Part shown: one piece after another, positions 512 to 32,297 of the stretch | Layout: the number at the start of each line of letters is the position of its first letter | How positions within the stretch are numbered: position 1 is the first letter of the stretch | Assembly: GCA_002269645.1 (NCBI GenBank) | Contig: NIVC01000672.1 | Span: 186,001-250,000 of the forward strand | Direction: 5' to 3' | DNA: 64,000 nt | Origin: Macrostomum lignano | Lineage: Eukaryota | Translations under genes and position numbers: made by a program | The notes under the pieces: model-generated | Database searches by the model: none | Told to the model about the DNA's origin: nothing | The model's input: the letters and a program-made list of their open reading frames with translations, nothing else

Positions 512-512
512 C

Positions 513-599
<87 letters not shown>

Positions 600-600
600 C

Positions 601-680
<80 letters not shown>
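132..680 (+). repeat. (GACA)n microsatellite with CACTAA interruptions
   Basis: Directly visible. Confidence 0.95.
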
Positions 681-681
<1 letters not shown>

Positions 682-1291
682 AGCAAAGTGAAATAACAGC
701 AGGAACATCCTGTTTTGAGATGCCGGGTCCTTTCGGACCAATTAACCAAGCGCTTATAACTTTGCTTTATTTATTTTGCAGCTCAGGGATGCGAGTTAGC
801 AAAAATTGACTTAGAAAAAATTCCTCTCTGAGTTGGTGTTCGCCCGTCGCGCCGGCCAGCCCACTGGAGCGCAGGTTTCAAACGGTGTTTAAGGTACCAA
901 CATTCTGCGAGCTTGGCGTTTATCCATCGAGTTGGACTTTGCGGTTTCGCATTGTGCAGCAACAACAGATAAACAATGGTTGGGGGGCGGTAAATTTGTT
1001 CTTCAGCTGCTTGCTGATTAATATTCCTGATTTTCAGCTTGAAGAAATTCCCCCAGATGACTGGGCCGAGTTGGACAAGACGACAAAGCTTTGCAACCGG
1101 GACTTGGTGACCAAAGAGGGGGGCAGAGACAAGTTGGAGAAGCAAAATCCAGAGAGTAATTTTGTAACAAATTATGACGGAAACTGCTAGTGAAAAAAGA
1201 CTGCTTTTTTAGACAATGAGGATAAACAGTGAGGATGGAATCCTGGGGCTCACAGCGACAAAGTCAAGGTACCAGAGGTCCTTGAAGCATG

Positions 1292-8000: not shown

Positions 8001-8806
8001 GTGGCCGCTGCTCACCATGGCCATGCCGGAGCCGTCCGCGTGCCGGCCGCCGGCCGGGCTCAGGCTGTGCAACGGGCCGGTGGAAATCTGCAGGCTGCCG
8101 CCGCGCCTCGAAGCCGCAAACTCGGCGAGGCTGCCGCGGACGATGACATGGCTGAGCTCGCGGCAACGGCCGGAGTGCTGGGCAATGAGCTCGTGCGCAT
8201 TGGGCACCAAGATCTCCTGGATGTTGGCCTTGCGTCTCTCCACCCAGCGGGCCTCCAAGTCCACGCAGATGGCGCCGGGCTCGCACTGGTTGCAGCCTGC
8301 GCAGGCCGGCAGGCGGGGGCGGGCGGTCAGCTGAGTGCAGTTTTTACAGAGGAGCTAAAAATAGTCTGCCAGCGGCTTCTTTTTGCGCCAGTTTCATTTC
8401 CAATTTGTTGCTTATTTTCGACCTTGAGGGAATTCCCTAGATGGAATTTGCGTCTCTGTTTTTGCGCTTCTACGGCTGCAGTTTTCACTTGCTTCTGTTT
8501 TCTGATGCAAGGCCCCGGCCGAGATTTAGTCAAACCGAAGCCATGAAAGATATTTCCACTGGTGCATCGCCAAGAGGGGTCATGGACCCCCCCCCTCGCC
8601 AGTCAAGTTTTGAATCTAAATTTTTACAATTGCCAAAAAAAGTTGATAGAAAGGCGACTTTAAAAGATTCAGAGAACACTTTCAGCTCGTGCTAAAAAAG
8701 ATCGCCAAATACTGGACTCGAACTCACCAGCATCTTCAGCGCCGGCGATGGTCGTCAGGGCCACCGCAACCAGGCAACAGCTCAGGCAGCTGAGAGTCTT
8801 CACCAT
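2015..8806 (-). CDS. Single-pass type I membrane protein: signal peptide, ~205-aa unrecognised (possibly CUB-like) ectodomain, one LDL-receptor class A module, TM helix, short tail (342 aa, 4 exons)
   Basis: Exons 8806-8728 (MVKTLSCLSCCLVAVALTTIAGAEDA), 8296-7682, 5864-5724 (ESDCYLKCDQSTRCVGRSRICDGVQDCGAGVNATSNDEGSLLC: 6-Cys LDLa with CDGxxDC and DE), 2208-2015 (TATVAAVAVAALALLALLAVAVAAGLAL-RR TM, tail ending DKSPLI*). All three introns are GT-AG and phase 1; total 1029 nt. Confidence 0.85.
2641..2990 (+). repeat. Degenerate CT-rich polypyrimidine tract in LDLa-gene intron 3
   Basis: Directly visible. Confidence 0.85.
3512..4200 (+). repeat. 11-bp ATTGCTAATCC array with higher-order gcataggagcagggaatgg inserts
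   Basis: Directly visible. Confidence 0.92.
4735..5325 (+). repeat. 16-bp minisatellite GAATCTGTGAGGATGY, ~37 copies
   Basis: Directly visible. Confidence 0.92.
5977..7023 (+). repeat. 50-bp minisatellite, ~21 near-identical copies
   Basis: Unit ttactgcacttgactgcagacagggggagctgagctactgactacaatag. Confidence 0.95.
7303..7650 (+). repeat. 19-bp minisatellite cggcagacacaaaggcact
   Basis: Directly visible; starts ~30 nt into intron 2 of the LDLa gene. Confidence 0.92.
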
Positions 8807-9149
8807 CGAGTATTGTTGAATAGCTTGAGTTCTGAGGAACTGCTCAAGAGAGGCTGGAGAAAGCGGAGGACGGGAAGCTGAGCGCAGCGGATGCGGCATT
8901 GCGATACCCGCGCCGGGTGGTCTTATGTGTTCGCGAGCAGCGGGGCCGCCCCTACTCCGCTCCCCCTGCCAATTGCGGACTGCCATTGTTCTGCAGCTGC
9001 TGGTAGCCCGGCTGGCCGACTTATTGGCCCCCACGGCTGTGTAGGGTGGGCGAGGGAGAGAGGGGAGAGCCCGCGGGACAGGGCTGTGCGGGGGCGGACA
9101 CTGGCTGCAAAGCAAATGACTTTGGGACAGATACTAAGACATTGAGGCG

Positions 9150-9471
9150 CAGACAAACGGACGGACGGAAGGACTGACGAACAGACAGACAGACCGACAG
9201 ACAGACAGACAGGCAGACGGACAGATAGACAGAAAGACAGACAGACAGACAGACAGACCGACAGACAGACAGACAGGCAGACGGACAGATAGACAGAAAG
9301 ACAGACAGACACACAGACCGACAGACAGACAGACAGGCAGACGGACAGATAGACAGAAAGACAGACAGACAGACACACAGACAGACAGACAGACACACAG
9401 ACAGACAGACAGACAGACAGACACACAGACACACAGACAGACAGACAGACAGACTGACAGACAGACAGACT

Positions 9472-9533
<62 letters not shown>

Positions 9534-9534
9534 A

Positions 9535-9568
<34 letters not shown>

Positions 9569-9706
9569 GCAGACAGACAGGCAGACAGACAGACAGACAG
9601 ACACACAGACAGACAGACAGACACATAGACACACAGACAGACAGACAGACACACAGACAGACAGACAGACAGACAGACAGACTGACAGACAGACAGACAG
9701 GCAGGC

Positions 9707-9759
<53 letters not shown>

Positions 9760-9996
9760 GGCAGACAGACAGGCAGACAGACAGACAGACACACAAACAC
9801 ACAGACACACAGACAGACAGACAGACAGACTGACAGACAGACAGACAGGCAGACAGACAGGCAGACAGACAGACAGACAGACACACAGACAGACAAACAG
9901 ACAGACAGACAGGCAGACAGACAGGCAGACAGACAGACAGACAGACACACAGACAGACAGACAGACACATAGACACACAGACAGACAGACAGACAC

Positions 9997-10060
<64 letters not shown>

Positions 10061-10062
10061 GC

Positions 10063-10095
<33 letters not shown>

Positions 10096-10136
10096 GGCAG
10101 ACAGACAGGCAGACAGACAGACAGACACACAAACAC

Positions 10137-10209
<73 letters not shown>

Positions 10210-10233
10210 TAGACAGACAAACAGACGGACAGA
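9150..10233 (+). repeat. (GACA)n/(GGCA) microsatellite, ~1.1 kb
   Basis: Directly visible. Confidence 0.95.
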
Positions 10234-10630
10234 CATTCAGTACGGCTCTGCAAAAGAACTCAAGCGCTCGACATTCTGGTTTCTCCTGGCGGCTCAGAAA
10301 TGGGGAAAAGTATTGCATTTTTTACATTGATTATCTGACCACCTCGGCTGCCTTGAATGCAGTTGACGAGGAACTTGATTTGGCCATAAATGGTTCAGGC
10401 TACATGGGAGCAGTCCTGCAGCTTACCGCCTTTATCCCGCTGAGCAGCACTGAGCTTTCTTTGGTCGCCGCACCGCCGCTCTCCCGGTTGCTTGGCTGAA
10501 TTTTAGCAACACCCAAAATCGATACATTCGATAGATCTTTGCCGCCCTGGCTGCCCACTGGAACCGCCATGCGTGCTGTAAAATGCTATAAAACCTCTGA
10601 AGCCGCTCTTAGGGGGGGTCAATCTCTGAC

Positions 10631-12364
10631 TTGATTTTGAGCCAGTTTTTCGGCATGCAGCCGTCGGATACTGGAGTGAGCTCCGGGCCGCCCGCCGCGG
10701 CGGCAGAGGAACAGTCGGTGCTGGCTGCTGAAGATCCAAACTGGGATCCGGTGGAGACCGTGCAGCACCAGCTTGTCAGCGGCGATTCTGACAGCACTGT
10801 GGAAGAGTGCACTGGGAGCCAGGAGGTTAAAGGAGCGACAGGCGGGAAGCGGCAGCCAGCTGGAGTGACAGGCGCTGGTGAGCAGCTACCAGCTGGAGTG
10901 ACAGGCGCTGGTGAGCAGCTACCGGCTGGAGTGACAGGCGCTGGTGAGCAGCTAACGGCTGGAGTGACAGGCGCTGGTGAGCAGCTACCGGCTGGAGTGA
11001 CAGGCGCTGGTGAGCAGCTACCGGCTGGAGTGACAGGCGCTGGTGAGCAGCTACCTGCCAGAGTGACAGGCGATAAGCAGCAGCCAGCTGGAGTGACAGG
11101 CGGTAAGCAGCAGCCAGCCGGAGTGACAGGCGGTAAGCAGCAGCCAGCCGGAGTGACAGGCGGTAAGCAGCAGCCAGCTGGAGTGACAGGCGGCAAGCAG
11201 CAGCCAGTCGGAGTGACAGGCGGTAAACAGCAGCCAGCCAGAGTGACAGGCGGTAAACAGCAGCCAGCCGGAGTGACAGGTCCCCGAGGCGCTGCCGCAG
11301 CGAAGACCCACCGAGCCTCATCGGCTGCACCTTCTCAGACGCGCCTGTCGGGCAACGGCGGACGTCGCGGCTTTAGTGGCTCTGAGGGGCAGCTGACGGA
11401 GGCTGCCGTGGCAGGCGGGAGAAGCAGAAAGGGCAGCAGCAGCCGCAGCTCAGACTCTGGCACGAGTGTGGCTAAGATTTTTAGCAATAGAAGTCCGGCT
11501 ACTAGACCTGCAACCATCAACAAGGCTGCTTCTAAAAGTACAGACACCGGCAAAGGACTTCTTAAAAGTACAGACACCAGCAAAGGACCTGTTAAAAGTA
11601 CAGGCACCGGCAAGGGACCTGCTAACGGTTCAGGAACCAGCAAAGGACCTGCTAAAAGTGCAGGAACCAGCAAAGGACCTTCTAAAAGTACAGACACCGG
11701 CAAAGGACCTGCTAAAAGTTCAGACACCGGAAAAGGACCTGTTAAAAGTACAAGCACCGGCAAGGGACCTGCTAACAGTGCAGGAACCAGCAAAGGACCT
11801 GCTAAAAGTACAGACACCGCCAAAGGACCTGTTAAAAGTACAGACACCGGAAAAGGACCTGTTAAAAGTACAGACACCGGCAAAGGACCTGCTAAAAGTG
11901 CAGGAACCAGCAAAGGACCTTCTAAAAGTACAGACACCGGCAAAGGACCTGTTAAAAGTACAGACACCGGCAAAGGACCTGCTAAAAGTACAGACACCGG
12001 CAAAGGACCTGTTAAAAGTACAGGCACCGGCAAGGGACCTGCTAACAGTACAGACACCGGCAAAGGACCTGCTAAAAGTACAGACACCAGCAAAGGACCT
12101 GTTAAAAGTACAAGCACCGGCAAGGGACCTGCTAACAGTGCAGGAACCAGCAAAGGACCTGCTAAAAGTACAGGCACCGGCAAAGGACCTTCTAAAAGTA
12201 CAGAAACCAGCGCCAAATGCTCTAAAGATATCCGTAAAGCAGCTCCTGCCTCAACTGATGCAATTTCCTGTGCAGCAGCTGACGAAGTAGAGGTGGGCGG
12301 AGGCGGCCGAGAGCCGGGGCGGATGGCAAGTCAGGTGATTCGGGGCAGCGGGGATGGTGGATAA
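10631..12364 (+). CDS. Long low-complexity ORF (first ATG 10655) built from in-frame tandem repeats: AGEQLPAGVTG (33 bp), GKQQPAGVTG (30 bp), KGPxKSTxTG (30 bp)
   Basis: 577 codons open. Repeat units are multiples of 3, and the unique segments before, between and after the arrays stay in frame. No recognisable domain, and the antisense frame is also partly open, so coding status is unproven. Confidence 0.4.
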   Translation: MILSQFFGMQPSDTGVSSGPPAAAAEEQSVLAAEDPNWDPVETVQHQLVSGDSDSTVEECTGSQEVKGATGGKRQPAGVTGAGEQLPAGVTGAGEQLPAGVTGAGEQLTAGVTGAGEQLPAGVTGAGEQLPAGVTGAGEQLPARVTGDKQQPAGVTGGKQQPAGVTGGKQQPAGVTGGKQQPAGVTGGKQQPVGVTGGKQQPARVTGGKQQPAGVTGPRGAAAAKTHRASSAAPSQTRLSGNGGRRGFSGSEGQLTEAAVAGGRSRKGSSSRSSDSGTSVAKIFSNRSPATRPATINKAASKSTDTGKGLLKSTDTSKGPVKSTGTGKGPANGSGTSKGPAKSAGTSKGPSKSTDTGKGPAKSSDTGKGPVKSTSTGKGPANSAGTSKGPAKSTDTAKGPVKSTDTGKGPVKSTDTGKGPAKSAGTSKGPSKSTDTGKGPVKSTDTGKGPAKSTDTGKGPVKSTGTGKGPANSTDTGKGPAKSTDTSKGPVKSTSTGKGPANSAGTSKGPAKSTGTGKGPSKSTETSAKCSKDIRKAAPASTDAISCAAADEVEVGGGGREPGRMASQVIRGSGDGG

Positions 12365-13233
12365 TCGGGGAAAATAAACGGGGGCGGAGATTAAAGTCTC
12401 AAATTGGATTTAGGGCGGGTCCTGCTCCAATTTCAGGCCAGCGACTCCCCCCCCAGCTCCCATTAGGCGCACCTCTCAGGTCTGATTGCCCCTGCCTGAC
12501 GTCAGCAGGCGGTGGGGATCGGTTTGCCTGAAGCGGATATTTTGGAAGACCCAATCGCTACGTGATTGCAGTCCTCTTCAATGGATCATCGACCGCTGGG
12601 GTCTGTTGACAGACCGAGCAGCTCTAAAGCGACTCAGACTAAAAATAGCAGCTTAATAGCATTTTCTCCCTTTTGTCTGAATTTTTTTCTCGTTGTCAAA
12701 ATTCGGCTGGCTGGAAAATTGGGCACTTTTTAGTGCTGTTTTTAGATTTGTCCGTCTCTCTGTCATCGCGTCCTTCGGGCTCTCGGCTGCCGTAAACACG
12801 GCACTCCTGCGGGACATCCTGCCAGATGTCACTGAGTCTAATCAAGTTAGAGTTTCACAAATCGAAATTCGATGGCAGCGCAAACACTGCGGAGGCGTTG
12901 GGGGTGGGGGGCGCCCTGATCTCGCCTGCGCTTGCGGATGACATGGAAACTGGAGGCTTGAAAAATGATTAAAAATTGACATTCGTTTGAGATTGTTTCT
13001 TTTGAGTCTTGCCGTTTTATTTTTATTTTGTTTATTGCCGCTCAACCTCTGTACCCTCCTATGCACCCCCTATATCCTCCTGCTATACCCTCCTCTATAC
13101 CCTCTCTCTATACCCTCCCTCTCTCCCCTCCTTCCCTCCTCTACTCCCCTAGCATTTTTCACAGAATCCTGAGTTCATATTTTTCTTGAGCCATTCGAAT
13201 AACATTCGAGCTCCTTGCCACCACCTTTTGCAG

Positions 13234-13687
13234 AGCCGAGTTCGACCAGCTTGTCAAGGACAGCCAAAGCGGAGAACTCGCAGGTGAGCAAAGCCCAGCA
13301 GTTCACCTGCTCATCAGCCTCCAGCCTCCTATCTCTACTATTTGCATAGCAGCAAATCTCAGCAGAAGATAACTAGGACTATAGCTAGCAGGCGGTGCAG
13401 GCCTCAGTCAGTTGCACAGCCAGTTGCATAGGCAAACATGAGCCCTCAGACAGGCCAGCTTGCATATTTAGCAGTGATTCCATCAGCTCCTGTGCGCTGT
13501 TAGGCAGCTTCCCAGGCTCTCTCTCGGTCCCGCTACTGCAGATGCGGGCTTTAGCGAAGCAGTTCACCGCTAGAGAAAATGATACAGCAGCAGCCGCAGT
13601 TTTCCAGTCGGGGCCAGTTCTTCCGCCTCAACCCCAGCCTTCAACAACGCGCCCTGCATTTTCAGACGACAGACGCGCCTGCAGCCG
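13234..13687 (+). other. Two candidate internal exons (13234-13283 and 13542-13687)
   Basis: ccttttgcAG...GCAG|GTGAGC and ctactgcAG|ATG...GCCG|GTGAGT. Joined frame reads PSSTSLSRTAKAENSQ-MRALAKQFTARENDTAAAAVFQSGPVLPPQPQPSTTRPAFSDDRRACS. No homology recognised. Confidence 0.35.
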
Positions 13688-13765
13688 GTGAGTCTCAGTG
13701 GCGGTGCTTCTCAACTGCATGGTTGCGGGGCGGTCTCGGTGTCTGCATTCGGTGGAATAAAATAT

Positions 13766-14820
13766 CGGCATCCCGGGATTGGAAACACCGGTAGTTGGAG
13801 ACCGGCATCCCGGGATTGGAAATGCCGGTAGTTGGAGACAGGCATCCCGGGATTGGAAACACCGGTAGTTGGAGACCGGCATCCTGGGATTGGAAACACC
13901 GGTAGTTAGAGACCGGCATCCCGGGATTGGAAATGCCGGTAGTTGGAGACCGGCACACCGGTAGTTGGAGACCGGCATCCTGGGATTGGAAACGCCGGTA
14001 GTTGGAGACCGGCATCCTGGGATTGGAAACACCGGTAGTTGGAGACCGGCATCCCGGGATTGGAAACACCGGTAGTTAGAGACCGGCATCCCGGGATTGG
14101 AAACACCGGTAGTTGGAGACCGGCATCCCGGGATTGGAAACACCGGTAGTTAGAGACCGGCATCTCGGGATTGGAAACACCGGTAGTTAGAGACCGGCAT
14201 CCTGGGATTGGAAACACCGGTAGTTGGAGACCGGCATCCCGGGATTGGAAACACCGGTAGTTGGAGACCGGCATCTCGGGATTGGAAACACCGGTAGTTG
14301 GAGACCGGCATCCTGGGATTGGAAACACCGGTAGTTGGAGACCGGCATCCCGGGATTGGAAACACCGGTAGTTGGAGACCGGCATCCTGGGATTGGAAAC
14401 ACCGGTAGTTGGAGACCGGCATCCCGGGATTGGAAACACCGGTAGTTGGAGACCGGCATCCCGGGATTGGAAACACCGGTAGTTAGAGACCGGCATCCTG
14501 GGATTGGAAACACCGGTAGTTGGAGACCGGCATCCTGGGATTGGAAACACCGGTAGTTGGAGACCGGCATCCCGGGATTGGAAACACCGGTAGTTGGAGA
14601 CCGGCATCCCGGGATTGGAAACACCGGTAGTTAGAGACCGGCATCCCGGGATTGGAAATGCCGGTAGTTAGAGACCGGCATCCTGGGATTGGAAACACCG
14701 GTAGTTAGAGACCGGCATCCCGGGATTGGAAACACCGGTAGTTGGAGACCGGCATCTCGGGATTGGAAACACCGGTAGTTGGAGACCGGCATCTCGGGAT
14801 TGGAAACGCCGGTAGTTGGA
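13766..14820 (+). repeat. 37-bp minisatellite ggcatcccgggattggaaacaccggtagttggagacc, ~28 copies
   Basis: Directly visible. Confidence 0.93.
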
Positions 14821-16176
14821 GATGATATAAGCGAAAAAATGACAAAAATAATGTTTTAATGGTCCCCCTCAACATGTATTTTGTGCTTGGGAATAGATCC
14901 CGGTTTTGGCAAAATTCCTGCTATTAATACCGGATCCCGTTATCAGCAAGGCCGGAATTCGCAATCGTAGCAGCGGAACAGCCAAATGCGCCAGGCAGAC
15001 AGACAGCCGAAATTGCACACGGCTAACACAAGCCAGTCCAAGAGTGAGTGCTGCACTTTTTGGCTACAGTTTTGTTATTCCAATCGAAGTGCTTTGGAAC
15101 GCGCAGAGGCCGTCTGCGTGACCTTATGCGAAACCTTCGGCTGTAAGGAATAAACAGCTAAAATAGACTTTAGTTCCTGGCAAAAAATAGGTTGCAGCAT
15201 AAGGACATCGGGGCCCCCACGCGGGTCCGATCCTCGATCCAAACTTATTTACCCAGATGCAATAAAAAGCAAGGGCTGACGCAATCTTTCAAGTGAGTAA
15301 ACTGAGCAGAAATTTGGCTTAGAAACAGCATAGCAACAGCTTGGCTGGGAGTCCCTTGCTCGAATGAGTGAACTTGCCCTGCAAAAACGAGCCGGGGTGG
15401 TGGCTGCGGGGTCGGCCAGCTGTTCTCAACTGGCCTCAGCTCTGCCCTGAGTAGCGCTGGCCTTCAAGGCTTTGCACTATTTTTGGGACAGGACAGATTG
15501 AAAAATCCGATGCCAAAACGCGGCTTTCACTACTGTTACACTCGCTATTAGTAGACAAATTCGGACATTATTTTAGTCCCATTAGGTGCCGGTAGATAAA
15601 TTGAGCACTTAAGTTTGCCAGTTCTGTGCAAACAGAGCGCAATTTTCATATCTCTACGCGTCTCCTTCTCTTTGTATTTGATGCAACGGGCAGGCCGGTG
15701 CACCCGACTGTCAGCGAGCAAAACGGGCTAGCGAGGTGTACGCAAGGAGGGCACTTGAGCTGCGAAAAGTGAGAGGGAGAGAGGGAGATAGGGAGCGAGA
15801 TGCCGTGTGAGCAGCGCTGCTTTGTGGGCTGAGCTGATGGAGCACACAATGAGCTCTGGCTGTTGCCGTTGCCAACGCCATCTTCGATAGTCTCCGACCC
15901 TCACCCACCTCCCCAGCCTGCCCGACTCTCCTCTCTCAGCCTGGCTGCCCCCCCCCCCCCCGGGGTGAACTGCTGCCGCATCAAAAGCAACAAGACGCTC
16001 TTTTTGCTCGCCAGTTTTTTCAAGCATCAAAACGCAGAGAAGAGAAACACAGAGTTATTTAATATGAAAGATTGCAACTGATAAAGAGCAGCGGAGAGCA
16101 GAGGAGAACAAGTGTACTCGGCGGGCAAGCCAATCGGATTCGAACTGAGCTGAGACTGGACAAACTCGGCTCAAAT

Positions 16177-19100
16177 ATGGCCGAGCGGCGCTCCCGAGCG
16201 CTGAGCAGGCTGAGAGCTGAGGAGCAGCTCAGGCGGAGAGAGTTCAGAAGCTTCGACGAGTTCGGAAGGACGATCCCGGAGATCATGGCCGAGGAGGAGG
16301 ACACGCCGAGGCAGCGAATGCGCATCGGCCTGCCTGCCGACTGTGAGGCACCGCGGCGGCTCTGGGGACTTCGGGGACCGAGCTGGGGATCTGGGGCGCT
16401 GCGGGACCTTGGGATCTGGGGATCTGGGGCGCTGCAGGACCCTGGGATCTGGGGATCTGGGGCGCTGCGGGACCCTGGGATCTGGGGATCTGGGGCGCTG
16501 CGGGACCCTGGGATCTGGAGATCTGGGGCGCTGCGGGACCCTGGGATCTGGGGATCTGGGGCGCTGCGGGACCCTGGGATCTGGGGATCTGGGACTCCCT
16601 GCTGTGTCAGAACCTGGCATTTGGGACTCTCATTCTGTCAGATTGTGACATTCGAGACTCTCATGCTGTCAGACCCTGTATTTGGGACTCTCATGCTGTC
16701 AGACCCTGGTATTTGGGACTCTCATGTTGCCATTTCGGCCTAATTTGTCACTTTTTAAGTGTATACGAGTGTACGCTCGAATATTTATCAAATCTGATAT
16801 CAGTTCAATTGTCATGATAAACTAAATGACCCTTATAGGAGCTTTGAGACTGCTCTAAAGTCTTATCAGGACTTCCAACAAAGAACCGTATCTGCCTTCC
16901 TTGCAGGGGTCACCCCCCGAGGTGAGGAGATCCAGCCCAAGGTGGATGCCTACAATGAGGATTACAAGCCTGGAGGAGGGAGTGTAAGCTAGCTAAAAAA
17001 TTATCATGGTGCATAAATTGGAATGTTTTTGAAAAGAAATCGTTAAATTCGAAGCTAAACATCGTTTCGTTGTCATTTCAGAGAAAGATTTTCCACGAAA
17101 AAGTGGAATTTCAGACTGAGAGCAAGATTAAATCGCTGGAGAACCAGGACTACCAACCAGGTGAGTTATGGCTGGTTGGAAAAGAGTAGTTCGTTTAGAA
17201 AATTTGAATTCTATGTCAATTTTTATTTTACGGACATCTCTACCTAAATAATAAAATTCATGGCACAGCTCGACTCATTGGTTTTATGAATCTATTTTAT
17301 CATAATTGCTACACATATTGTTACACAGTCAGCTAAGAATGACAGAATAGATTCATAAAACCAATGCGCCGAGCCGTGCCGGAGAATAAAATTCCTAATA
17401 GAATAGAATAGAATCCTAATTTTCTGAACGAAAAGCTCCATGAATATCAGTAGAGCAATAAGAAAGGCAAAACATATCAAAAGATGAGCATTGGTTCTGT
17501 CTCCTATCGAAGGCAATAACAATTTTAAAATGAAAAAGTGAAAACTTCCTATCTCCGTGGTGCATTTTTCGGCGAAAATCAGCCTCCTTAACATTTTCTA
17601 AGAAACGTAGTTTCCCGATCCCGTCCTACTTGAGTAGTCCTTGGCTAAAGGTTAGAAATGGGTTGGCATGTACATTTGAGAGGGAAGGAAATTCAATATT
17701 TAATGTACACTTGTTTACTGCTAGCTAACGGTAGGGTCGGTGGGATAGGGCTGAAAAGGACAGAGCTGGAATGTACATTTAAAAGGGAAGGAAATTCAAG
17801 ATTTACTGTACACTTGTTTACTGCTAGCTAACGGTAGGGTCGGTGGGATAGGGCTGAAAAGGACAGAGCTGGAATGTACATTTAAAAGGGAAGGAAATTC
17901 AAGATTTACTGTACACTTGTTTACTGCTAGCTAACGGTAGGGTCGGTGGGATAGGGCTGAAAAGGACAGAGCTGAAATGTACATTTAAAAGGGAAGGAAA
18001 TTCAAGATTTACTGTACACTTGTTTACTGCTTTCTCGTGATAGACCCTGGAGGCCCGGAAGAGGTAGAGTTAGCATGTATATTCGACTGCGATTCCAGCT
18101 AGATTTTCAACCCTCCAAAACTCAACCTGGCAGGCGGCGGCAACAAGCCCATCTTCAACGAGCGGCTGGAATTTCAGAAGGAGGCCAAGCCGAAGATTGG
18201 CTCGCTGGAGAATGCGGAGTACAGGCCCAGTGGAGGCGACAAGAAGGTAAAGATTGGAATGTTTTTTTAAATGTATAAATTTTATTTTTATATCAAAGCA
18301 GGCTTTGATTGATTTCCTGCTTAGTCTAATCAAAAACATTCAGTTTGAACGAGCTGTTCAGTCCCTGATATTCAACAAACTCTCGCGGCGGCTGTCAGGT
18401 GTTCCAGGAAGCGGTCCAGTGGCACGCGCACTCCAAGATCGGCTCCTTGGACAACGCCACCCACAAGCCCGGCGGGGGTGACAAAAAAGTACACCCCCAT
18501 GCATACTACTTATAGCGGAGTAGAACTCTCGATTTGATTTGTATCCAGTAGATATAGATAAACACAATAACACGATGAATAGGAGTTCCGTTTTTAGTTG
18601 TTAATAATCACCATAATTATTTTTAGAGTGTTACCATAGCAACAATTGATAGAAAATTAATAACCCGGTGACTGGGCCAACCAAATAACTGTAATTTAAA
18701 TTATTATAAAAACCAGAAGTAGCAAAAACTAATACGTTTGCTCATTAGTTCCCTGTGCGTTATATTTTTTTATGCAGTTGTTGTGTTTCGCAGTAGATCG
18801 TGTAGCCAATTCCTTTTAATTGTAGCGTAGTGAGAAAGAAAACATTTTTTATTGGGATTACTTTACCGGACACAAAAAATCTCGATCGAGGGTGCAGACA
18901 GCTCGCTGACAGGGTGGGCAACAACGCCTTTCGAATGGCCTGGCGTTTTTGCGAACTTAAGATTATTTAGTATTCAGGTCGTTGGGAAAATTCCCTTCAA
19001 ACTTATTCGTGAACTTATTTTTGCAAAACCCGGAAAAGTTTCTGCTGTTTTGAAGTCATTTTAAGAAAAGCATTCGTATATTTAAATTAAATAATTGCTA

Positions 19101-22100
19101 GAAAACTGAGTGAACAAATGGCTTTTTAAAAAATCTCTTCCTAAACGTATTTGTTTCCCGGTAAACTCGGAACTAATTTGACGGAAAACCTTGTCTTTGT
19201 TTGAACTCATTAGTTTCGTAGAAAACCCGCGAAAAATCGTAAATAACCCGAAAAAATGTCGTAATGAGAACTTGAGTTACGTGACAGTGTTTTACCAACG
19301 CATCGTTCCCTCTCGACTGCCTCGATGGCAGTTTGTGTACAGCGAGCGGCTTCGATGGACGGACAAGCCGGCCCTGAACACCAGGGAGAACATCGACTAC
19401 CAGAGCCGGCCGTCCAAAACGCGGGTGAGGCGTGCGGACCGCGCCAGCCCTGGGTTCGGTAGCCCTCAGCCCTGACGCTTTGCACCTTCTCACAAGTTGC
19501 TTCTCCCTGTTTGCCAATAATTCTGACAATATTTTTCACCCTATGCAGTCTTTGGCGCTTCTGTGACTCGAGAGTTTCTTTGGCCACTCTCACCAGCCAG
19601 CCAAGTTTCGAACAACACCCGCGTTTTGCTGTGCCGCTAACTAAAATGACACATTGATTTACCAGTTTCCATTCACTTATATCCTGGAAATAGTTCAGAA
19701 TCCTACTTTTCACCTTCCTAAATGCCTACCAAAAAACTCAGATTTTCAACGACCAGCTGGACTTCACGGACAGGGCGCAGCCAAAGGTCAGATCTCTGGA
19801 GAACAAGGACTACGAGCCCAGGCGGCCTGGAATTCGAGTGAGTTGGAGATCCGGGATCTAGGGATGCATCCGGGATGCAGTGAGCAGTGAAACTGAGGGA
19901 AGGAGTTTTGTTTTGAGGAACAGGCACACCACAACTTAATCATGCAGACACACTACAGACAGCTTAATCACACAGGCACACTACATACAGCTTAATCACA
20001 CAGGCACACTACATACAGCTTAATCACACAGGCACACTATAGCTTAATCACACAGGCACACTACATACAGCTTAATCACACAGGCACACTATAGCTTAAT
20101 CACACAGGCACACTACATACAGCTTAATCACACAGGCACACTACATACAGCTTAATCACACAGGCACACTATAGCTTAATCACACAGGCACACTACATAC
20201 AGCTTAATCACACAGGCACACTATAGCTTAATCACACAGGCACACTACATACAGCTTAATCACACAGGCACACTACATACAGCTTAATCACACAGGCACA
20301 CTACATACAGCTTAATCACACAGGCACACTACATACAGCTTAATCACACAGGCACACTACATACAGCTTAATCACACAGGCACACTACATACAGCTTAAT
20401 CACACAGGCACACTACATACAGCTTAATCACACAGGCACACTACATACAGCTTAATCACACAGGCACACTACATACAGCTTAATCACACAGGCACACTAC
20501 AGCTTAATCACACAGGCACACTACAGCTTAATCACACAGGCACACTATAGATTAATCACACAGGCACACAGTTTCAAGTCTGACTCACGGAGGTCGCAGG
20601 CGAGACCCTGGGGTGTTTGCCATTGTCATGTCATTGTAAAGTTTCTGAATAGAGCATCCGTCCTGCCCCGCTGCACAATCAGCAGTGCTCAGACAGCTGT
20701 CCCGACTGCCGCCTTCCGTTGCTGGTAAGCCTGAGTCCTCCTCCTAGCAACTGGATTGAGTGGAGGATTAAGGACCCCGGGTGTGGGCAACCGCATGAGT
20801 CAAACTCTGAGCACAGAAGTCAATCCCGCGCACTCTATGCACACAATATGAATGCTGTAACCTTTTCAGTTCACACACGGCAGATAGGGGCAGTTTTTGC
20901 TGAATAAAAATCTCCTTATCACATGTAAAATGCGCCCCCCATAAAAGTAGAAATTTGATGCAATCAGCTGTGTGTGAACTGAAAAACCCCGGCCTATTAA
21001 AATTAGGGTTTGGGGAGAGGTCGGCACTGCATGCTGTGGTTCAAAGGGCTCCCTGAGAGCGTGCTTTATGCCCCATCCGTCAAGCTTCTTCTTCAAATCT
21101 TCCACACTTCGACTCCGCGACCCCGAACCTCTGGAAGGTGTACCACGAGCGGCTGCCCTGGCTGGAGCACGACAGCAACCGGCCGAGGCTGCGCCGCGGC
21201 TCCGGGGACTTCGGCAGAGGTGGCGGCTTCGAGTCCAGGCGGGAATACGCGGAGGAGGTGGAGCAGCGGGCGCAGCGGCAAGACGGGGACGGCCGCGGGC
21301 AGCAGCGGCGGCAGCAGCGGCGAGCCAACAGCGAGGAGGCGGGCCAGCGGGCGGCCTTGCGCGAACGGCAGCGAGAGTTCGCGCAGCGGACGGCGGCCGA
21401 AGCGGCGGCCAAGCCGGCGGCCACGCGACACCGCCGGCTGCCGAACGAGCGGGACCCAAAGCAGGCCGATCCAGCGGCCGAGGCGGCGGCGGCGGACAGG
21501 AAGCGGCGCCAGCAGCAGCTGCAGGAAGAGAAGGAGAGGCGAGAGCAGCGGCAGCGACAACAGCAGGAGCAGCAGCAGAAGCAGCAGGAGCAGCAGCAGA
21601 AGCAGAGAGAGCAGCAGCGGCAACAGCAACAAAATTTGCAGCAGCAGAAGCAGCAGGAGCAGCAGAGGCAGAAGGAGCAGCGGGAGAAGGAGAAGAGGGA
21701 ACGGGAGCAGAGGCAGCAGCCTGGCAACAATTCACAGGCCGCACAAAAGCCATCCGGTGAAGCCAAATTGGCAGGTAATAAAAAATCTGCCGGAGCTGCT
21801 GAGGCAAAGCCGGGCGGCGGTATGGCTCAGCAGAAGCAAAAACAGCCGAAGCAGCAGCAGCAGAAGAAGAAGACTCCGCCGCAGCAAAAGCAGCCGCAGC
21901 GGGAGCCGGACGAGTGGGAGTACGCCAGGCACGAGTTCGACAAGCCCCGACAGGCCTCCCCAGAGAAGAAGAAGGCGGCGGACAAGGCGGGCAAGAAGCC
22001 GACGGATGAAGCAGCTTCGGTGCCGCCACTGGAGCTGCCGGCGCAGCAGCCGGAGGAGGCCGAGGCCGGCGCCGAGACGGGCAGGGGCGCCAAGGACCTG

Positions 22101-23070
22101 TACAAGACCGAGGGCTACGCCAGGCGCTTCGAGCTGGCCCCAGCCTCCGTCACCAACCGGTCGCTGATCCTGGCCCCGCTGGAGAACTACCGGCACGACT
22201 GGCACGAGGACGCTGATGTGAAGGTGCGCATGGACGGCGAGGGCCGCCTGGTGCTGAAGTCCAACCGGAAGGTGCCAACCCGCCTGCCCCGGGTGGCGGA
22301 GGCCGACCCGCCTGCCGCGGCGACCTACGTGTCGTCCATCTCCAAGAAGGAGCGGCCGCTCTACGACCCGAAGCCGAAGCTGGTGACCGGCGACGACCTC
22401 GGCCACCTGCTGCCCCGGCTGGAGAACCTGCTGGACAGCCCGGCCGCGCCCAAGAAGCACTACAGCCAGTACAGCCTGGACAAGCGGGCGGGCAAGCCGC
22501 CGGGCTACGGCGAGACCATGCGGCGCCAGCGGGAGCGCCACGGCTACCGGGTGAACCCCGAGGGCGAGCGGGTGGCGCTGATCAGCTCGGATGACTACAA
22601 CAACCAGTTCTACTCGGAGGTGCGGCTGCGCGACGCCCAGCTGGAGCCGCGGTCCACCGGCCAGTACGCCAGGAACTTTGAGCAGCAGCAGCAGCCGCCG
22701 GTGCAGCAGCCGCAGGCGCTGGCGCAGCAGGCCGAGCCGCAGCCCGACGAGCTGTCGGACCGCCTGCTGCTGCAGCCCTCCGAGCAGCTGCCGCACTACC
22801 GGCCGGACGGCGGCGAGTTGATCCAGCCAGCCACCACCTCCTCGCTGATGGACTTCGCCGACTATTACGGCGAAGACGCGGACGCGGCCACGGTGACGAA
22901 CTCCTCGCAGGCCGGCGGACGGGCGGCGCAGCGTCGGCAGCGCCGGTTCGTGAACTGGAAGCCGGGCGAGGTGCTGTACGCCACCGGCGCCGAGCGGCAG
23001 GCCGGAGGTCCCGCAGGCGGCGGCGACGGGGCCGCGGTAGCGGCTTACTCTGAGAAGCTCAAGAAGCAGC

Positions 23071-23122
<52 letters not shown>

Positions 23123-23252
23123 CTTCTCCGGCCTCCACGAGCACCGGAAGAACTGGTACCGCGACTACAACCAGCGAATGCTGGCCAGGGAGGGCAACGT
23201 TGAGAAAGTGTCCGAGCGGGACCTCCTGCACACCACCTACGAGCTCTACTGA
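16177..23252 (+). CDS. Tau/MAP2/MAP4-family microtubule-binding-repeat protein with long Q/E/R-rich C-terminal extension (942 aa, 8 exons)
   Basis: Exons 16177-16342, 16907-16983, 17082-17160, 18134-18246, 18399-18488, 19332-19424, 19742-19837, 21138-23252; GT-AG, phases 1,0,1,0,0,0,0 consistent. Repeats: IQPKVDAYNEDYKPGGG, TESKIKSLENQDYQPGGG, AKPKIGSLENAEYRPSGG, AHSKIGSLDNATHKPGGG, DKPALNTRENIDYQSRPS, AQPKVRSLENKDYEPRRP (cf. Tau SKIGSLDNITHVPGGG). Confidence 0.85.
16383..16725 (+). repeat. 33-bp GGGATCTGGGG-rich array (~6 copies) followed by a 30-bp array (~4 copies)
   Basis: Directly visible in intron 1 of the Tau-like gene. Confidence 0.85.
17667..18030 (+). repeat. 103-bp tandem repeat, ~3.5 copies
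   Basis: tacattt anchor at 17671, 17774, 17877, 17980. Confidence 0.9.
19935..20570 (+). repeat. 28-bp (24-bp variant) minisatellite cacacaggcacactacatacagcttaat
   Basis: Directly visible. Confidence 0.92.
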
Positions 23253-23676: not shown

Positions 23677-23957
23677 ACTCACACACACTCACACACTCAC
23701 ACACACACACTCACACACTCACACACTCACACACACACACTCACACACTCACACTCACACACTCACACACACACACTCACACACTCACACACTCACACAC
23801 TCACACACACACACTCACACACTCACACTCACACACTCACACACACACACTCACACACTCACACACACACACTCACACACACACACTCACACACACACAC
23901 TCACACACACTCACACACACACACACTCACACACACACACACACACTCACACACACA
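23677..23957 (+). repeat. (CA)n/(CACT) microsatellite
   Basis: Directly visible. Confidence 0.95.
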
Positions 23958-25669: not shown

Positions 25670-27676
<2,007 letters not shown>

Positions 27677-29821: not shown

Positions 29822-32297
29822 ATGCTCGAGCGACTTCTCAACGCCCCAGTGCTCACAGCGGGGTTGCCTGGCCCAGCCAGACTTGTGAGCAGATAATTGC
29901 CGCTGAGCTGTGGGTAATAAAAACACAGAGTGGCTGTGGAATTCTTGTCTTGTTAATATCGGGTTTGTTTGCTTTTCGTGGAGGCATTCGAACCTTGGCC
30001 TACAGCAGCACACAGAGGCCGCCTGCAACCAGGTAGGCAGTTGGTTGGGTTGAGTAGGCAGTGGGTTGGTTTGGGTAGGCAGTGGGTTGGGTGGGTTGGG
30101 TTGGGTAGGCAGTGGGTTGGTTTGGGTAGGCAGTGGGTTGGGTGGGTTGGGTTGGGTAGGCAGTGGGTTGGGTGGGTTGGGTTGAGTAGGCAGTGGGTTG
30201 GGTGGGTTGGGTTGGGTAGGCAGTGGGTTGGGTGGGTTGGGTTGGGTAGGCAGTGGGTTGGGTGGGTTGGGTTGGGTAGGCAGTGGGTTGGGTGGGTTGG
30301 GTTGGGTAGGCAGTGGGTTGGGTTAGGTAGGCAGTGAGTTGGGTTGAGTAAGCAGTGGGTTGGGGTTGGGTATACTGTAAGGGTTGGAGTTTTAGTCTCA
30401 GCAAGTTCCGCCAATTTCAGTCACCAATGACGTCATCAGCATTGTCGGAGGCGCGCCGCCGCCAGCTGCCTCGGTGCCAGGAGGTGCTGAGCCGGGCCGA
30501 GCGGTCCCGGTTCTACAAGGAGCGCGCCAGGCGGCACAAGGAGAATGCGCTGCTGGAGCTGCGGCTGCAGCGGCTGGCGGCGGAGCGGGCGGCGGCGGAG
30601 CAGCGGCTGCGGCGGCGGACCGCGGAGGTGCGGCAGCTGGCGCTGGCCCAGCGGGACCAGGCCCGGGAGGCTCGCGAGGCCGACAGCCGCCTGCTGGAGG
30701 CTGTGATGCGAAAGATCCAGCTGAACAAGCAGGTTGGCTTCGAGCAGGCGATTAAGTACAAGTCCAGTGAGTGAGAGGGGCTGATTGCTCACCTTGTGTT
30801 GATACACTCATCCTCATCCACTGTGTGAATGCCCACGGATTCCGGTCAGTGACTGTGTGAATGCCTACGGATTCCGATCAGTGTGTGAATGCCCACGGAT
30901 TCCGATCAGTGTGTGAATGCCTACGGATTCCGATCAGTGTGTGAATGCCCACGATTCCGGTCAGTGACTGTGTGAATGCCTACGGATTCCGATCAGTGTG
31001 TGAATGCCCACGGATTCCGATCAGTGTGTGAATGCCCACAGATTCCGGTCAGTGACTGTGTGAATGCCCACGGATTCTGGTCAGTGACTGTGTGAATTCC
31101 CACGGATTCCGGTCAGTGACTGTGTGAATGCCCACGGATTCCTGTCAGTGACTGTGTGAAAGCCCACGGATTCCCGTCAGTGACTGTGTGAATGCCCACG
31201 GATTCCGGTCAGTGACTGTGTGAATGCCCACGGATTCCGGTCAGTGTGTGAATGCCCACGGATTCCGGTCAGTGACTGTGTGAATGCCCACGGATTCCGG
31301 TCAGTGACTGTGTGAATGCCCACGGATTCCGATCAGTGACTGTGTGAATGCCCACGGATTCCGGTCAGTGTGTGAATGCCCACGGATTCCGGTCAGTGAC
31401 TGTGTGAAAGCCCACGGATTCCGATCAGTGACTGTGTGAATGCCCACGGATTCCTGTCAGTGACTGTGTGAATGCCCACGGATTCCGGTCAGTGACTGTG
31501 TGAAAGCCCACGGATTCCGATCAGTGACTGTGTGAAAGCCCACGGATTCCGATCAGTGACTGTGTGAAAGCCCACGGATTCCGGTCAGTGACTGTGTGAA
31601 AGCCCACGGATTCCGATCAGTGACTGTGTGAATGCCCACGGATTCCTGTCAGTGACTGTGTGAATGCCCACGGATTCCGGTCAGTGACTGTGTGAAAGCC
31701 CACGGATTCCAATCAGTGACTGTGTGAAAGCCCACGGATTCCGGTCAGTGACTGTGTGAATGCCCACGGATTCCGGTCAGTGTGTGAATGCCCACGGATT
31801 CCGGTCAGTGACTGTGTGAATGCCCACGGATTCTGGTCAGTGACTGTGTGAAAGCCCACGGATTCCGATCAGTGACTGTGTGAAAGCCCACGGATTCCGA
31901 TCAGTGACTGTGTGAATGCCCACGGATTCCGGCTGCAATTACAGAGAAGGTGCAGCAGCAGCTTCGCGAGCAGCAACAGTTGCAGCTAGGGGCCCCCAGG
32001 ACACCGCCAACGCCGCCGCCGCCGCCGCCGCCGCCGCCACAGCTGGACCTGCGGCTGATCTGGCCGGGCTTGCGCAGCCGCGGCCACTTCAGGCGGCTGT
32101 ACGCGCAGCTGCTGCTGGCCCAGCCAGGCCCAGATGAAGCCAGGCGGCGCGGTGACGAGTGCCTGCAGGCGCTGGCCGAGAAGTTCGCCGTCCGAGTCGG
32201 CACTACGGCTGGTGAGGACGCCGCCTTGACGGTTGCGAAGGCTCCGGCGGTGGCTGCAGCGTCTGCCGAGGAGCTTCGGCTCTGCTGGACTCGCTGA
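29822..32297 (+). CDS. Orphan coiled-coil protein (~253 aa, 3 exons; upstream exons possible)
   Basis: Exons 29822-29884, 30421-30766, 31945-32297 with GT-AG and matching phases (0, 1). Exon 2 is R/E/A-rich helical (ALLELRLQRLAAERAAAEQRLRRR); exon 3 has Q and poly-P runs; GC3-rich codons. Confidence 0.65.
30031..30365 (+). repeat. 30-bp G-rich array gggtaggcagtgggttgggtgggttgggtt
   Basis: Directly visible in intron 1 of the coiled-coil gene. Confidence 0.9.
30820..31932 (+). repeat. 32-bp (27-bp variant) minisatellite cagtgactgtgtgaatgcccacggattccggt
   Basis: Fills almost all of intron 2 (30767-31944). Confidence 0.94.

What the first reader, a model, noticed from the sequence alone, without database searches (positions are those of the whole stretch)
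16177..23252. Inverted Tau/MAP architecture: six N-terminal microtubule-binding repeats plus a 704-aa C-terminal exon
Seen: repeats start ~60 aa from the first Met. There are six, the last two lacking PGGG (SRPS, PRRP), plus the start of a seventh (VYHERLPW). One 2115-nt exon then encodes E/Q/R coiled coil, K/Q-rich linker, a Tyr/Pro-rich conserved-looking middle (EGYARRFELAP...YRHDWHED...PLYDPKP) and polyQ. Established: vertebrate Tau/MAP2/MAP4 have 3-5 repeats near the C-terminus behind an N-terminal projection domain. Inference: a lineage-specific MAP class whose projection is C-terminal, or a Tau-repeat fusion to another protein.
Basis: partly seen in the sequence, partly recalled or inferred. 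Interest (0 to 1): 0.72.

Follow-up and report, generated by a model that had tools for sequence, protein, structure and literature searches.

The report
Flatworm Tau-like gene, reversed layout
This is a microtubule-binding protein gene of the Tau/MAP2 family, almost certainly from the flatworm Macrostomum lignano. Its binding repeats sit at the front and a 700-residue, mostly disordered tail with no known relatives follows, an unusual layout for an otherwise familiar protein family that still needs transcript proof.

Summary
Eight GT..AG exons (16177-23252, + strand) join in frame into a 942-aa protein. Pfam Tubulin-binding (PF00418) scores 109.9 bits against a cut-off of 27, E = 5e-32.

Five repeat units are individually significant: R1-R4 and R6. 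R5 is marginal. R7 is only a repeat-start motif.

Exon 8 belongs to the gene:
- It opens in phase 0 with VYHERLPW. That motif occurs six times in all six frames of the 64 kb window, each time at the start of exons 3-8.
- GC3 jumps from 0.56 to 0.96 at its acceptor and stays at 0.9-0.99 to the stop.

GC3 also switches on at the ATG (0.54 to 0.86). No frame-specific coding signal lies upstream.

Among 120 homologues, none has fewer than 327 residues before its repeats and none has a tail longer than its N-flank. The layout is therefore a true outlier.

The tail has no relative among 1.84 billion proteins. It is predicted to be two long charged helices plus disorder. It looks like an expansion of the family's usual last exon, not a recognisable fusion.

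The organism is almost certainly Macrostomum lignano. No transcript evidence was available. Verdict: a new variant of a known kind, of moderate interest.

The parts
16056..16062 (+). TATA-like element (TATTTAA) about 120 nt upstream of the ATG; possible core promoter (inference only)
   Evidence: sequence
16177..16342 (+). Exon 1: ATG (A at -3, G at +4), 55 aa R/E-rich N-terminus with no homologue; donor GACT|GTGAGG
   Evidence: GC3 is 0.54 in the in-frame stretch before the ATG, 0.855 in the exon, and flat (0.70) after the donor
16907..16983 (+). Exon 2: repeat unit R1 (…QPKVDAYNEDYKPGGGS)
   Evidence: 19.3 bits, 0/500 shuffles; tblastn hits from homologues
17082..17160 (+). Exon 3: repeat unit R2 (RKIFHEKVEFQTESKIKSLENQDYQP-)
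   Evidence: (39.1 bits)
18134..18246 (+). Exon 4: end of R2 (GGG) plus repeat unit R3 (IFNERLEF…KIGSLENAEYRPSGGDKK), with a KXGS motif
   Evidence: (51.7 bits)
18399..18488 (+). Exon 5: repeat unit R4 (VFQEAVQWHAHSKIGSLDNATHKPGGGDKK). The most canonical unit; 90 nt, phase 0-0
   Evidence: best Pfam stretch 145-173; 61.9 bits
19332..19424 (+). Exon 6: degenerate unit R5 (FVYSERLRW…IDYQSRPSKTR), PGGG lost; 93 nt, phase 0-0
   Evidence: marginal, 24/500 shuffles; start motif; coding score 26 bits
19742..19837 (+). Exon 7: degenerate but significant unit R6 (IFNDQLDF…KVRSLENKDYEPRRPGIR); 96 nt, phase 0-0
   Evidence: (25.5 bits, 0/500)
21138..23252 (+). Exon 8, the last exon: repeat-start motif VYHERLPW (21138-21161), then a 696-aa tail and TGA at 23250-23252
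   Evidence: GC3 is 0.56 before the acceptor and 0.96 after it, then 0.89 overall. The 704-codon open frame was never reached in 500 shuffles (maximum 523)
21294..21713 (+). E/R/Q/A-rich segment predicted as two long alpha-helices (exon-8 residues 53-91 and 113-192, protein aa 291-329 and 351-430). Includes imperfect CAG/AGC-type repeats
   Evidence: 10-residue block pLDDT 84-93 over exon-8 residues 121-190; 67 for 111-120, 61 for 191-200
22089..22703 (+). Non-repetitive Tyr/Pro/Arg/Leu-rich middle (aa 556-760). Strongest codon bias (GC3 0.95-0.99), but no homologue and predicted to be mostly disordered
23065..23119 (+). (CAG)n tract encoding an 18-residue polyQ run, followed by a 37-aa tail predicted helical

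Best explanation
This is a single eight-exon gene for a MAP2/Tau-family microtubule-associated protein, almost certainly in Macrostomum lignano.

Shown by sequence:
- About 60 aa of unique N-terminus.
- Four canonical tubulin-binding repeats (R1-R4, with PGGG/PSGG ends and KIKS/KIGS/KIGS motifs).
- One clearly related degenerate repeat (R6).
- One marginal unit (R5) and a repeat-start remnant (R7).
- R7 opens the last exon, and that exon runs on for about 700 further codons.

Inferred mechanism:
- R1-R4, possibly with R6, lie along microtubule protofilaments as in Tau/MAP2/MAP4, and the KXGS serines allow MARK/PAR-1-type regulation.
- The Arg-rich stretch just after the repeats (aa 247-330) may take the role of the basic flanking region that normally precedes the repeats.
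- The two long charged helices and the disordered Q/K/P/Y-rich remainder project from the microtubule surface as a spacer or scaffold. This is the job normally done by the N-terminal projection domain.

Inferred origin: loss or absence of the N-terminal projection domain, together with expansion of the C-terminal tail inside the ancestral last exon. Part of that expansion came from CAG-type repeats.
For: Family membership:
- PF00418 scores 109.9 bits against a cut-off of 27, in 4 stretches.
- The best homologues are spiralian tau/MAP proteins, matched only over the repeats.
- Five units are significant against shuffles.

Gene model:
- All splice sites are canonical and the exons are in frame.
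- There is one unit per exon, with phase-0 boundaries after ...GG-x-KK for exons 5-8.
- The unit-start motif is found only at the starts of exons 3-8 in the whole window, including 21138.

Exon 8 is coding in this frame:
- GC1/2/3 is 0.74/0.44/0.89 overall, and GC3 reaches 0.99 in places. The other exons give 0.57/0.42/0.79 and the introns are 31-56% GC.
- GC3 steps up at the acceptor.
- The ORF is longer than in any of 500 shuffles.
- No in-frame ATG lies in exon 8 before aa 478.

Short N-terminus:
- GC3 steps up at the ATG.
- The ATG has a good Kozak context and a TATA-like element lies upstream.
- No frame-specific coding signal is present in 8354-16176.
- The upstream 577-aa ORF is 30/33-nt minisatellite with GC3 0.45.
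- tblastn of 120 homologues finds nothing upstream.
- A minus-strand GC3-rich ORF at 7674-8354 bounds the locus.

Tail properties:
- Zero homologues.
- AlphaFold2 predicts two long helices and leaves the remaining ~520 residues with no confidently folded domain; 414 of the 704 residues score below pLDDT 50.

Organism: an M. lignano UniRef protein matches the window's Piezo exons exactly, in several reading frames.
Against: - There is no transcript, EST or orthologue evidence for either the 5' end or the exon 7-8 junction.
- The protein is absent from a 15-billion-protein collection that does contain M. lignano models. It has therefore never been annotated, so low or no expression cannot be excluded.
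- No AATAAA or ATTAAA lies within 1.7 kb after the stop.
- The repeat domain is nearly charge-neutral (K+R 35, D+E 30), which is unlike the strongly basic vertebrate repeats, so microtubule affinity may be weak.
- Small upstream exons could escape the composition scan, which itself detected only 6 of the 8 known exons at the lenient threshold.
- The AlphaFold model used a single sequence.
Confidence: 0.68

Rival explanations
1. The N-terminus is incomplete. The real gene has further 5' exons, or an alternative distal promoter, that encode a conventional long projection and proline-rich domain. Only the C-terminal extension would then be unusual.
For: - Every one of 120 homologues has at least 327 aa before its repeats.
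- A 577-aa S/T/K/P/G-rich open frame lies 4-5.5 kb upstream on the same strand at 10631-12364, with weakly positive coding scores of 17-21 bits.
- The scan misses small exons.
Against: - The upstream ORF is made of 30/33-nt tandem arrays.
- Its GC3 is 0.45, and 0.30 in the main array, against 0.79-0.89 for the gene.
- Its positive scores appear in all three phases at once, which is a composition effect rather than a frame signal.
- Other frames and the opposite strand are open there too.
- GC3 switches on exactly at ATG 16177, and the in-frame stretch before it shows no codon bias.
- No homologue matches anything upstream.
Confidence: 0.15
2. Exon 8 is not, or not always, part of the Tau-like protein. 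Transcripts may end in intron 7, giving a 245-aa protein that is nearly all repeats. Alternatively, the complex C-terminal part from Met478 (about 21855) to the stop may be an originally separate single-exon gene, expressed on its own or fused only recently.
For: - Read-through of the exon 7 donor stops after 7 codons (VSWRSGI*), and an AATAAA lies in intron 7 at 20903.
- Codon bias is not uniform. GC3 is 0.69-0.71 in 21588-21888 and 0.92-0.99 after about 21888, close to the first Met of exon 8.
- The tail has no relationship to the MAP family.
Against: - Exon 8 begins, in phase, with the family's unit-start motif, which is found nowhere else in the window outside this gene.
- GC3 is already 0.96 in the first 81 nt after the acceptor and 0.88-0.91 through 21138-21440, so that stretch is coding and needs exon 7 to supply a start.
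- There is no stop codon between the repeats and the tail.
- No other candidate last exon for the Tau-like gene exists in the window.
Confidence: 0.12
3. This is a decaying or neutrally drifting duplicate. M. lignano has undergone recent whole-genome duplication. On this view the gene's degenerate repeats and low-complexity tail have no function.
For: - R5-R7 have lost PGGG and KXGS.
- The tail is orphan, repeat-rich and disordered.
- The gene is missing from existing annotations.
Against: - The 942-codon frame is intact across eight exons, with all 14 splice sites canonical.
- Very strong codon bias is maintained to the last codon, with GC3 up to 0.99 in the non-repetitive part. Such bias would erode in a pseudogene.
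Confidence: 0.05

Closest known systems
Non-vertebrate MAP2/Tau/MAP4-family proteins of spiralians (for example Lingula anatina 'tau isoform X3', Mercenaria, Haliotis, Gigantopelta, Tubulanus)
   Same: - The same PF00418 repeats (36-40% identity over the repeat block), with KxGS and PGGG motifs.
- Variable repeat number, from 4 to about 12.
- A final unit that begins like a repeat (…KKIE[ST]QKL[NT]FKE…) and then leaves the repeat pattern.
   Different: In all of these the repeats lie at the C-terminal end, behind 330-1300 aa of projection and S/P-rich sequence, and the tail after the last unit is about 20-120 aa. Here the N-flank is 60 aa and the tail about 700 aa. The last two or three units are also much more degenerate here.
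Vertebrate MAPT/MAP2/MAP4 (established knowledge; PMC4815063)
   Same: - Tandem tubulin-binding repeats.
- A gene structure with one repeat per exon, in phase-0 cassette-sized exons (here 90, 93 and 96 nt).
- A last coding exon that starts at the beginning of the post-repeat pseudo-repeat.
   Different: The vertebrate proteins have a long N-terminal projection domain and a proline-rich basic region before the repeats, followed by a short C-terminal tail. This protein has neither upstream element, its repeat block is nearly neutral in charge, and its projection-like sequence is C-terminal.
Planarian Smed-MAPT-L1, -L2 and -L3 (Magley & Rouhana 2019, PMC6743461)
   Same: These are flatworm MAP2/Tau-like paralogues with 3-4 complete or divergent repeats. 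They do not group with any vertebrate subfamily. Two are testis-enriched, which shows that the family has diversified in flatworms.
   Different: Their sequences and domain positions could not be retrieved here (no supplement is held). Whether any of them shares the N-terminal repeat layout or the tail is unknown.
Insect tau isoforms with long C-terminal tails (for example Macrosteles quadrilineatus isoform X2, several Hymenoptera)
   Same: They have an extended, repetitive, low-complexity sequence of 190-470 aa after the repeats. Long C-terminal tails are therefore not unique to this gene.
   Different: They keep a 525-950-aa N-terminal region, and none has a C-flank longer than its N-flank. 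Their tails are unrelated in sequence to this one.

Membership tests
MAP2/Tau/MAP4 family (Pfam PF00418 Tubulin-binding repeat) | Tandem ~31-aa tubulin-binding repeats scoring above the Pfam gathering threshold | tested here: met
   109.9 bits against a cut-off of 27, E = 5e-32, 4 stretches. Five units are found with a homologue-derived HMM, and each beats 500/500 shuffles.
MAP2/Tau/MAP4 family (Pfam PF00418 Tubulin-binding repeat) | KXGS phosphorylation motif and a PGGG-type end in the repeats | tested here: met
   KIGS is present in R3 and R4, with variants KIKS in R2 and KVRS in R6. The ends are PGGG in R1, R2 and R4 and PSGG in R3. Both features are lost in R5, and PGGG is lost in R6.
MAP2/Tau/MAP4 family (Pfam PF00418 Tubulin-binding repeat) | Gene structure: one repeat per exon, phase-0 boundaries after the PGGG-x-KK end, and a last exon starting at the pseudo-repeat | tested here: met
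   Exons 5, 6 and 7 are 90, 93 and 96 nt, each phase 0-0 and each one unit. Exon 8 begins with the unit-start motif. The comparison with vertebrate exon boundaries rests on established knowledge and was not recomputed here.
MAP2/Tau/MAP4 family (Pfam PF00418 Tubulin-binding repeat) | Canonical architecture: long N-terminal projection domain plus proline-rich region, repeats in the C-terminal part, short tail | tested here: not met
   The N-flank is 60 aa against at least 327 (median 569) in 120 homologues. The C-flank is 709 aa against a median of 49 and a maximum of 467. This is a typical feature of the family, not a defining one, so family membership by repeat homology stands.
MAP2/Tau/MAP4 family (Pfam PF00418 Tubulin-binding repeat) | Binds and stabilises microtubules | not testable with these tools
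   This needs co-sedimentation or TIRF assays. The near-neutral charge of the repeat block makes the result uncertain.
Fusion of Tau repeats with a second known protein family | The C-terminal part matches another family by sequence or fold | tested here: not met
   - Pfam gives only an insignificant DOR hit, E = 0.099.
- There are zero hits among 1.84 billion protein representatives.
- PDB sequence hits are only Q-rich noise at E >= 0.02.
- Metagenome contigs give none.
- The AlphaFold model has no globular domain.

The most novel reading that the evidence does not exclude
A natural 'inverted' Tau. This would be a functional MAP2/Tau-family protein whose microtubule-binding repeats are N-terminal and whose projection or spacer domain (charged helices plus a long disordered tail) is C-terminal. 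It would have evolved de novo in the macrostomid flatworm lineage by expansion of the last exon after loss of the ancestral N-terminal projection domain. If so, the polarity of the projection domain relative to the repeats is not constrained in this family.
Probability: 0.5. Interest if true: 0.45.

Novelty: new variant of a known kind. Interest (0 to 1): 0.36.

Why it matters
Tau, MAP2 and MAP4 are always drawn as 'projection domain, then proline-rich region, then repeats, then a short tail'. Models of microtubule spacing and of Tau's paperclip folding assume that order.

A functional family member with the opposite order would be a natural experiment. It would test whether the orientation of the projection domain matters for binding, bundling and spacing. 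It would also show how quickly a 700-residue disordered domain can arise inside one exon.

M. lignano is transgenic-tractable, so this could be tested in vivo.

The repeats themselves are ordinary, disordered flanks of this family are known to be unconserved, and the model lacks transcript support. The finding is therefore of moderate rather than high interest.

Tried and rejected
1. Upstream projection-domain exon at 10631-12364 (577-aa S/T/K/P-rich ORF). Rejected: it is 30/33-nt minisatellite, its GC3 is 0.45, several frames are open, and its coding score is not frame-specific.
2. Homology of anything else in the window to N- or C-terminal parts of 120 tau homologues. tblastn with and without SEG hit only exons 2-5 and 7.
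3. Homologues of the tail. An exhaustive phmmer search, PDB sequences, Pfam and metagenome contigs all came back empty.
4. Exact-sequence look-up of the spliced protein and of the exon-8 ORF in public assemblies.
5. Rfam and tRNA scans for taxon clues: nothing.
6. Literature:
   - No report of a Macrostomum Tau-like gene; the truncated eLife supplement has no MAPT/MAP2/MAP4 entry.
   - Domain positions of the planarian MAPT-L proteins are not available as text.
   - The supplements of the Tau evolution paper do not list flatworm entries.
7. A chance ORF as the explanation of exon 8. Rejected on periodicity and shuffles.
8. A third large protein search to fish for flatworm homologues was not run. 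The output is limited to the 120 best hits, which would again be non-flatworm proteins.
Full report
**What is there.**

The region is a eukaryotic split gene on the + strand. The segments are 16177-16342, 16907-16983, 17082-17160, 18134-18246, 18399-18488, 19332-19424, 19742-19837 and 21138-23252. Every intron has a GT(A/G)AG-type donor and a pyrimidine-rich ...AG acceptor.

Pfam finds only one family, PF00418 'Tau and MAP protein, tubulin-binding repeat'. It scores 109.9 bits against a gathering score of 27 (E = 5e-32), in four independently significant stretches.

**The repeats.**

I built a repeat HMM from the homologues and rebuilt it once from its own hits. It detects five units, at aa 61-83, 87-112, 119-145, 149-175 and 212-233. 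Each unit was then scored on its own against 500 shuffles of itself:

| Unit | Bits | Shuffles reaching the score |
|---|---|---|
| R1 | 19 | 0/500 |
| R2 | 39 | 0/500 |
| R3 | 52 | 0/500 |
| R4 | 62 | 0/500 |
| R5 (FVYSERLRW…SRPSKTR) | -0.3 | 24/500 (marginal) |
| R6 | 25.5 | 0/500 |
| R7 (first 32 residues of exon 8) | -4.0 | 368/500 (not significant) |

The statistically supported count is four canonical repeats, one clear degenerate repeat, one marginal unit and a start remnant. KIGS is present in R3 and R4, with variants KIKS in R2 and KVRS in R6. The unit ends are PGGG in R1, R2 and R4 and PSGG in R3.

**Is exon 8 part of this gene and really coding?**

Three independent lines say yes.

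1. *Repeat-start motif.* Each unit begins with [IV][FY].[EDS][KRQA][LV].[FW]. In the six-frame translation of the entire 64-kb window this pattern occurs exactly six times. All six are at or within a few codons of the starts of exons 3, 4, 5, 6, 7 and 8. The sixth is VYHERLPW, the very first codons after the 21138 acceptor, in the phase left open by exon 7.
2. *Codon-position composition.*
   - Exons 1-7 have GC1/2/3 = 0.57/0.42/0.79.
   - Exon 8 has 0.74/0.44/0.89, with GC3 of 0.92-0.99 through the non-repetitive 21888-23250 part.
   - Introns are 31-56% GC.
   - GC3 is 0.56 in the 81 nt of open frame before the acceptor and 0.96 in the 81 nt after it.
3. *ORF length and start.*
   - The sequence is only 8.6% T, yet the 704-codon open frame was never reached in 500 shuffles (maximum 523; i.i.d. 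probability about 2e-6).
   - The first in-frame Met of exon 8 is aa 478. The strongly periodic first 700 nt of the exon therefore cannot be translated without exon 7.
   - No other candidate terminal exon for a Tau-like gene exists in the window.

**Is the N-terminus really short?**

Composition points to the ATG at 16177. GC3 is 0.54 in the in-frame stretch before it, 0.855 in exon 1, and flat again after the 16342 donor. The ATG has A at -3 and G at +4. A TATTTAA lies about 120 nt upstream.

The 8 kb upstream consists mainly of satellites: (GACA)n, 30/33-nt arrays and a 37-nt array.

The tempting 577-aa S/T/K/P-rich ORF at 10631-12364 is made of those arrays. Its GC3 is 0.45, and 0.30 in the main array. 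It is open in several frames and on both strands.

A codon log-odds scan found no frame-specific signal on the + strand between 8354 and 16176. The same scan recovers 4 of 8 known exons at 25 bits and 6 of 8 at 12 bits. Its only extra calls (15-16 bits) fall in other frames over exon 1's end and the GC-rich 33-nt array at the start of intron 1; the other introns gave none. The weak upstream scores appear in all three phases at once, which is a GC-content effect.

A GC3-rich (0.91) ORF on the minus strand at 7674-8354 probably marks the neighbouring gene.

This is good indirect evidence, but it is not proof. Small exons or a distal promoter cannot be excluded without RNA data.

**How unusual is the layout?**

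The best database matches are spiralian tau/MAP proteins from Lingula, Nucella, Mercenaria, Haliotis, Argonauta and Gigantopelta, followed by insects. They match only over the repeats (12-24% of the query).

| | This protein | 120 retrieved homologues |
|---|---|---|
| Residues before the first repeat | 60 | minimum 327, median 569 |
| Residues after the last repeat | 709 | median 49, maximum 467 |

Eleven homologues have tails of at least 150 aa, but none has a C-flank longer than its N-flank.

Repeat number (5-7) is not unusual, since spiralian homologues reach about 12.

In those homologues the last unit also begins like a repeat (…KKIE[ST]QKL[NT]FKE…) and then ends within 20-50 residues. 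In vertebrate MAPT the last coding exon likewise begins at the post-repeat pseudo-repeat (established knowledge). Exon 8 is therefore the positional counterpart of the family's normal last exon, enormously extended. It is not an extra exon captured from elsewhere.

**What is the tail?**

Nothing recognisable.
- The C-terminal 450 aa gave zero hits at E <= 1e-3 in an exhaustive phmmer search of 1.84 billion representatives.
- Pfam gave only an insignificant hit.
- PDB sequences gave Q-rich noise.
- JGI metagenome contigs gave none.

A single-sequence AlphaFold2 model has mean pLDDT 52, and 414 of 704 residues score below 50. It predicts two long helices in the E/R/Q/A-rich part, at exon-8 residues 53-91 and 113-192, with 10-residue block pLDDT of 84-93 over residues 121-190. 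It also predicts a helix over the polyQ and terminal 37 aa. It predicts no globular domain.

Composition along the tail:
- aa 247-330: 23% Arg.
- aa 331-460: 30% Gln with R/E/K.
- aa 461-555: K/Q/A/P-rich.
- aa 556-760: non-repetitive, with 12 Tyr and 18 Pro.

Part of the tail is built from CAG/AGC-type repeats.

The 'fusion with another protein' reading thus has no positive support. A formerly separate orphan gene starting near Met478 cannot be ruled out, because codon bias steps up around 21888.

**Organism.**

A Piezo exon at 57.1-57.7 kb (Pfam Piezo_TM1-24, E = 2e-19) retrieved a single protein, UniRef A0A1I8FA51 of Macrostomum lignano. tblastn shows long exact stretches of that protein in several different reading frames of the window at 57.2-60.7 kb. 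The database entry is therefore a frameshifted model of this same DNA. The window is M. lignano or something nearly identical.

The Tau-like protein itself is absent from the protein collections, so it appears never to have been annotated.

In the planarian Schmidtea, three MAP2/Tau-like paralogues are known. Two are testis-enriched, and none shows an RNAi phenotype in spermatogenesis (PMC6743461). Their domain positions were not retrievable.

**Most likely function and mechanism.**

*Shown:* membership of the MAP2/Tau family by repeat homology and gene structure, and an intact, strongly codon-biased frame.

*Inferred:*
- R1-R4, possibly with R6, bind along protofilaments as in Tau.
- The KXGS sites allow kinase regulation.
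- The Arg-rich segment after the repeats may substitute for the missing upstream basic region.
- The helical and disordered tail projects from the microtubule as a spacer or scaffold.

*Caveat:* the repeat block is almost charge-neutral, so affinity could be low.

Rival explanations, with my estimates:

| Rival | Confidence |
|---|---|
| Missed 5' exons | 0.15 |
| Tail not always or not originally part of the protein, or a short isoform ending in intron 7 (read-through stops after 7 codons; AATAAA at 20903) | 0.12 |
| Decaying duplicate | 0.05 |

**Verdict.**

This is a real and rather odd member of a well-known family: a new variant of a known kind, not a new class. Its interest is moderate until transcripts and orthologues confirm both ends of the model.

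Noticed in passing
window 57123-57701, 58642-58799, 60086-60154, 60551-60658 (+): These are exons of a Piezo-type mechanosensitive channel gene (Pfam Piezo_TM1-24, E = 2e-19). The M. lignano UniRef entry A0A1I8FA51, named 'EXS domain-containing protein', matches these exons exactly but in several different frames. It is a frameshifted and misnamed model of this Piezo gene.
   Followed up: partly
window 42782-43399 (+): A GC3-rich exon (GC3 0.84) encodes a SERBP1/HABP4-like protein (Pfam HABP4_PAI-RBP1, E = 1e-4) with an RGG-repeat stretch.
   Followed up: partly
window 48287-51298 (+) and 33294-34208 (+): A 1003-aa ORF carries reverse transcriptase and RNase H domains, indicating a retroelement. 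Separately, a 304-aa ORF has a GIY-YIG nuclease domain and may be Penelope-like. Neither was characterised further.
   Followed up: no
window 7674-8354 (-): A 227-codon open frame on the minus strand shows very strong codon bias (GC3 0.91) but has no Pfam match. It is probably an exon of an orphan neighbouring gene, transcribed divergently from the Tau-like gene.
   Followed up: partly
window 48-749, 8923-10236, 10832-12208, 13766-14822, 16383-16593, 17664-18031, 19931-20569, 23680-23957: Tandem repeats are unusually dense around and inside the gene. There is (GACA)n over more than 1 kb, together with arrays of 30/33, 37, 33, 103 and 28 nt, three of them inside introns 1, 3 and 7. They generate many long spurious ORFs on both strands.
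   Followed up: partly
window 27082-27597 (-) and 30352-30771 (+): Two further GC3-rich open frames were seen. One has a weak PAN-domain match (E = 0.0017, below the Pfam cut-off) next to an (ATT/ATC)n-encoded poly-Ile run. The other is an R/E/A-rich, probably helical segment with no family match.
   Followed up: no
window 21775-21782 (+), inside exon 8: The sequence CAG|GTAATAAAAAA looks both like a splice donor and like an AATAAA signal. It sits in the part of exon 8 where codon bias is weakest (GC3 about 0.7) and could be a site of alternative processing.
   Followed up: no
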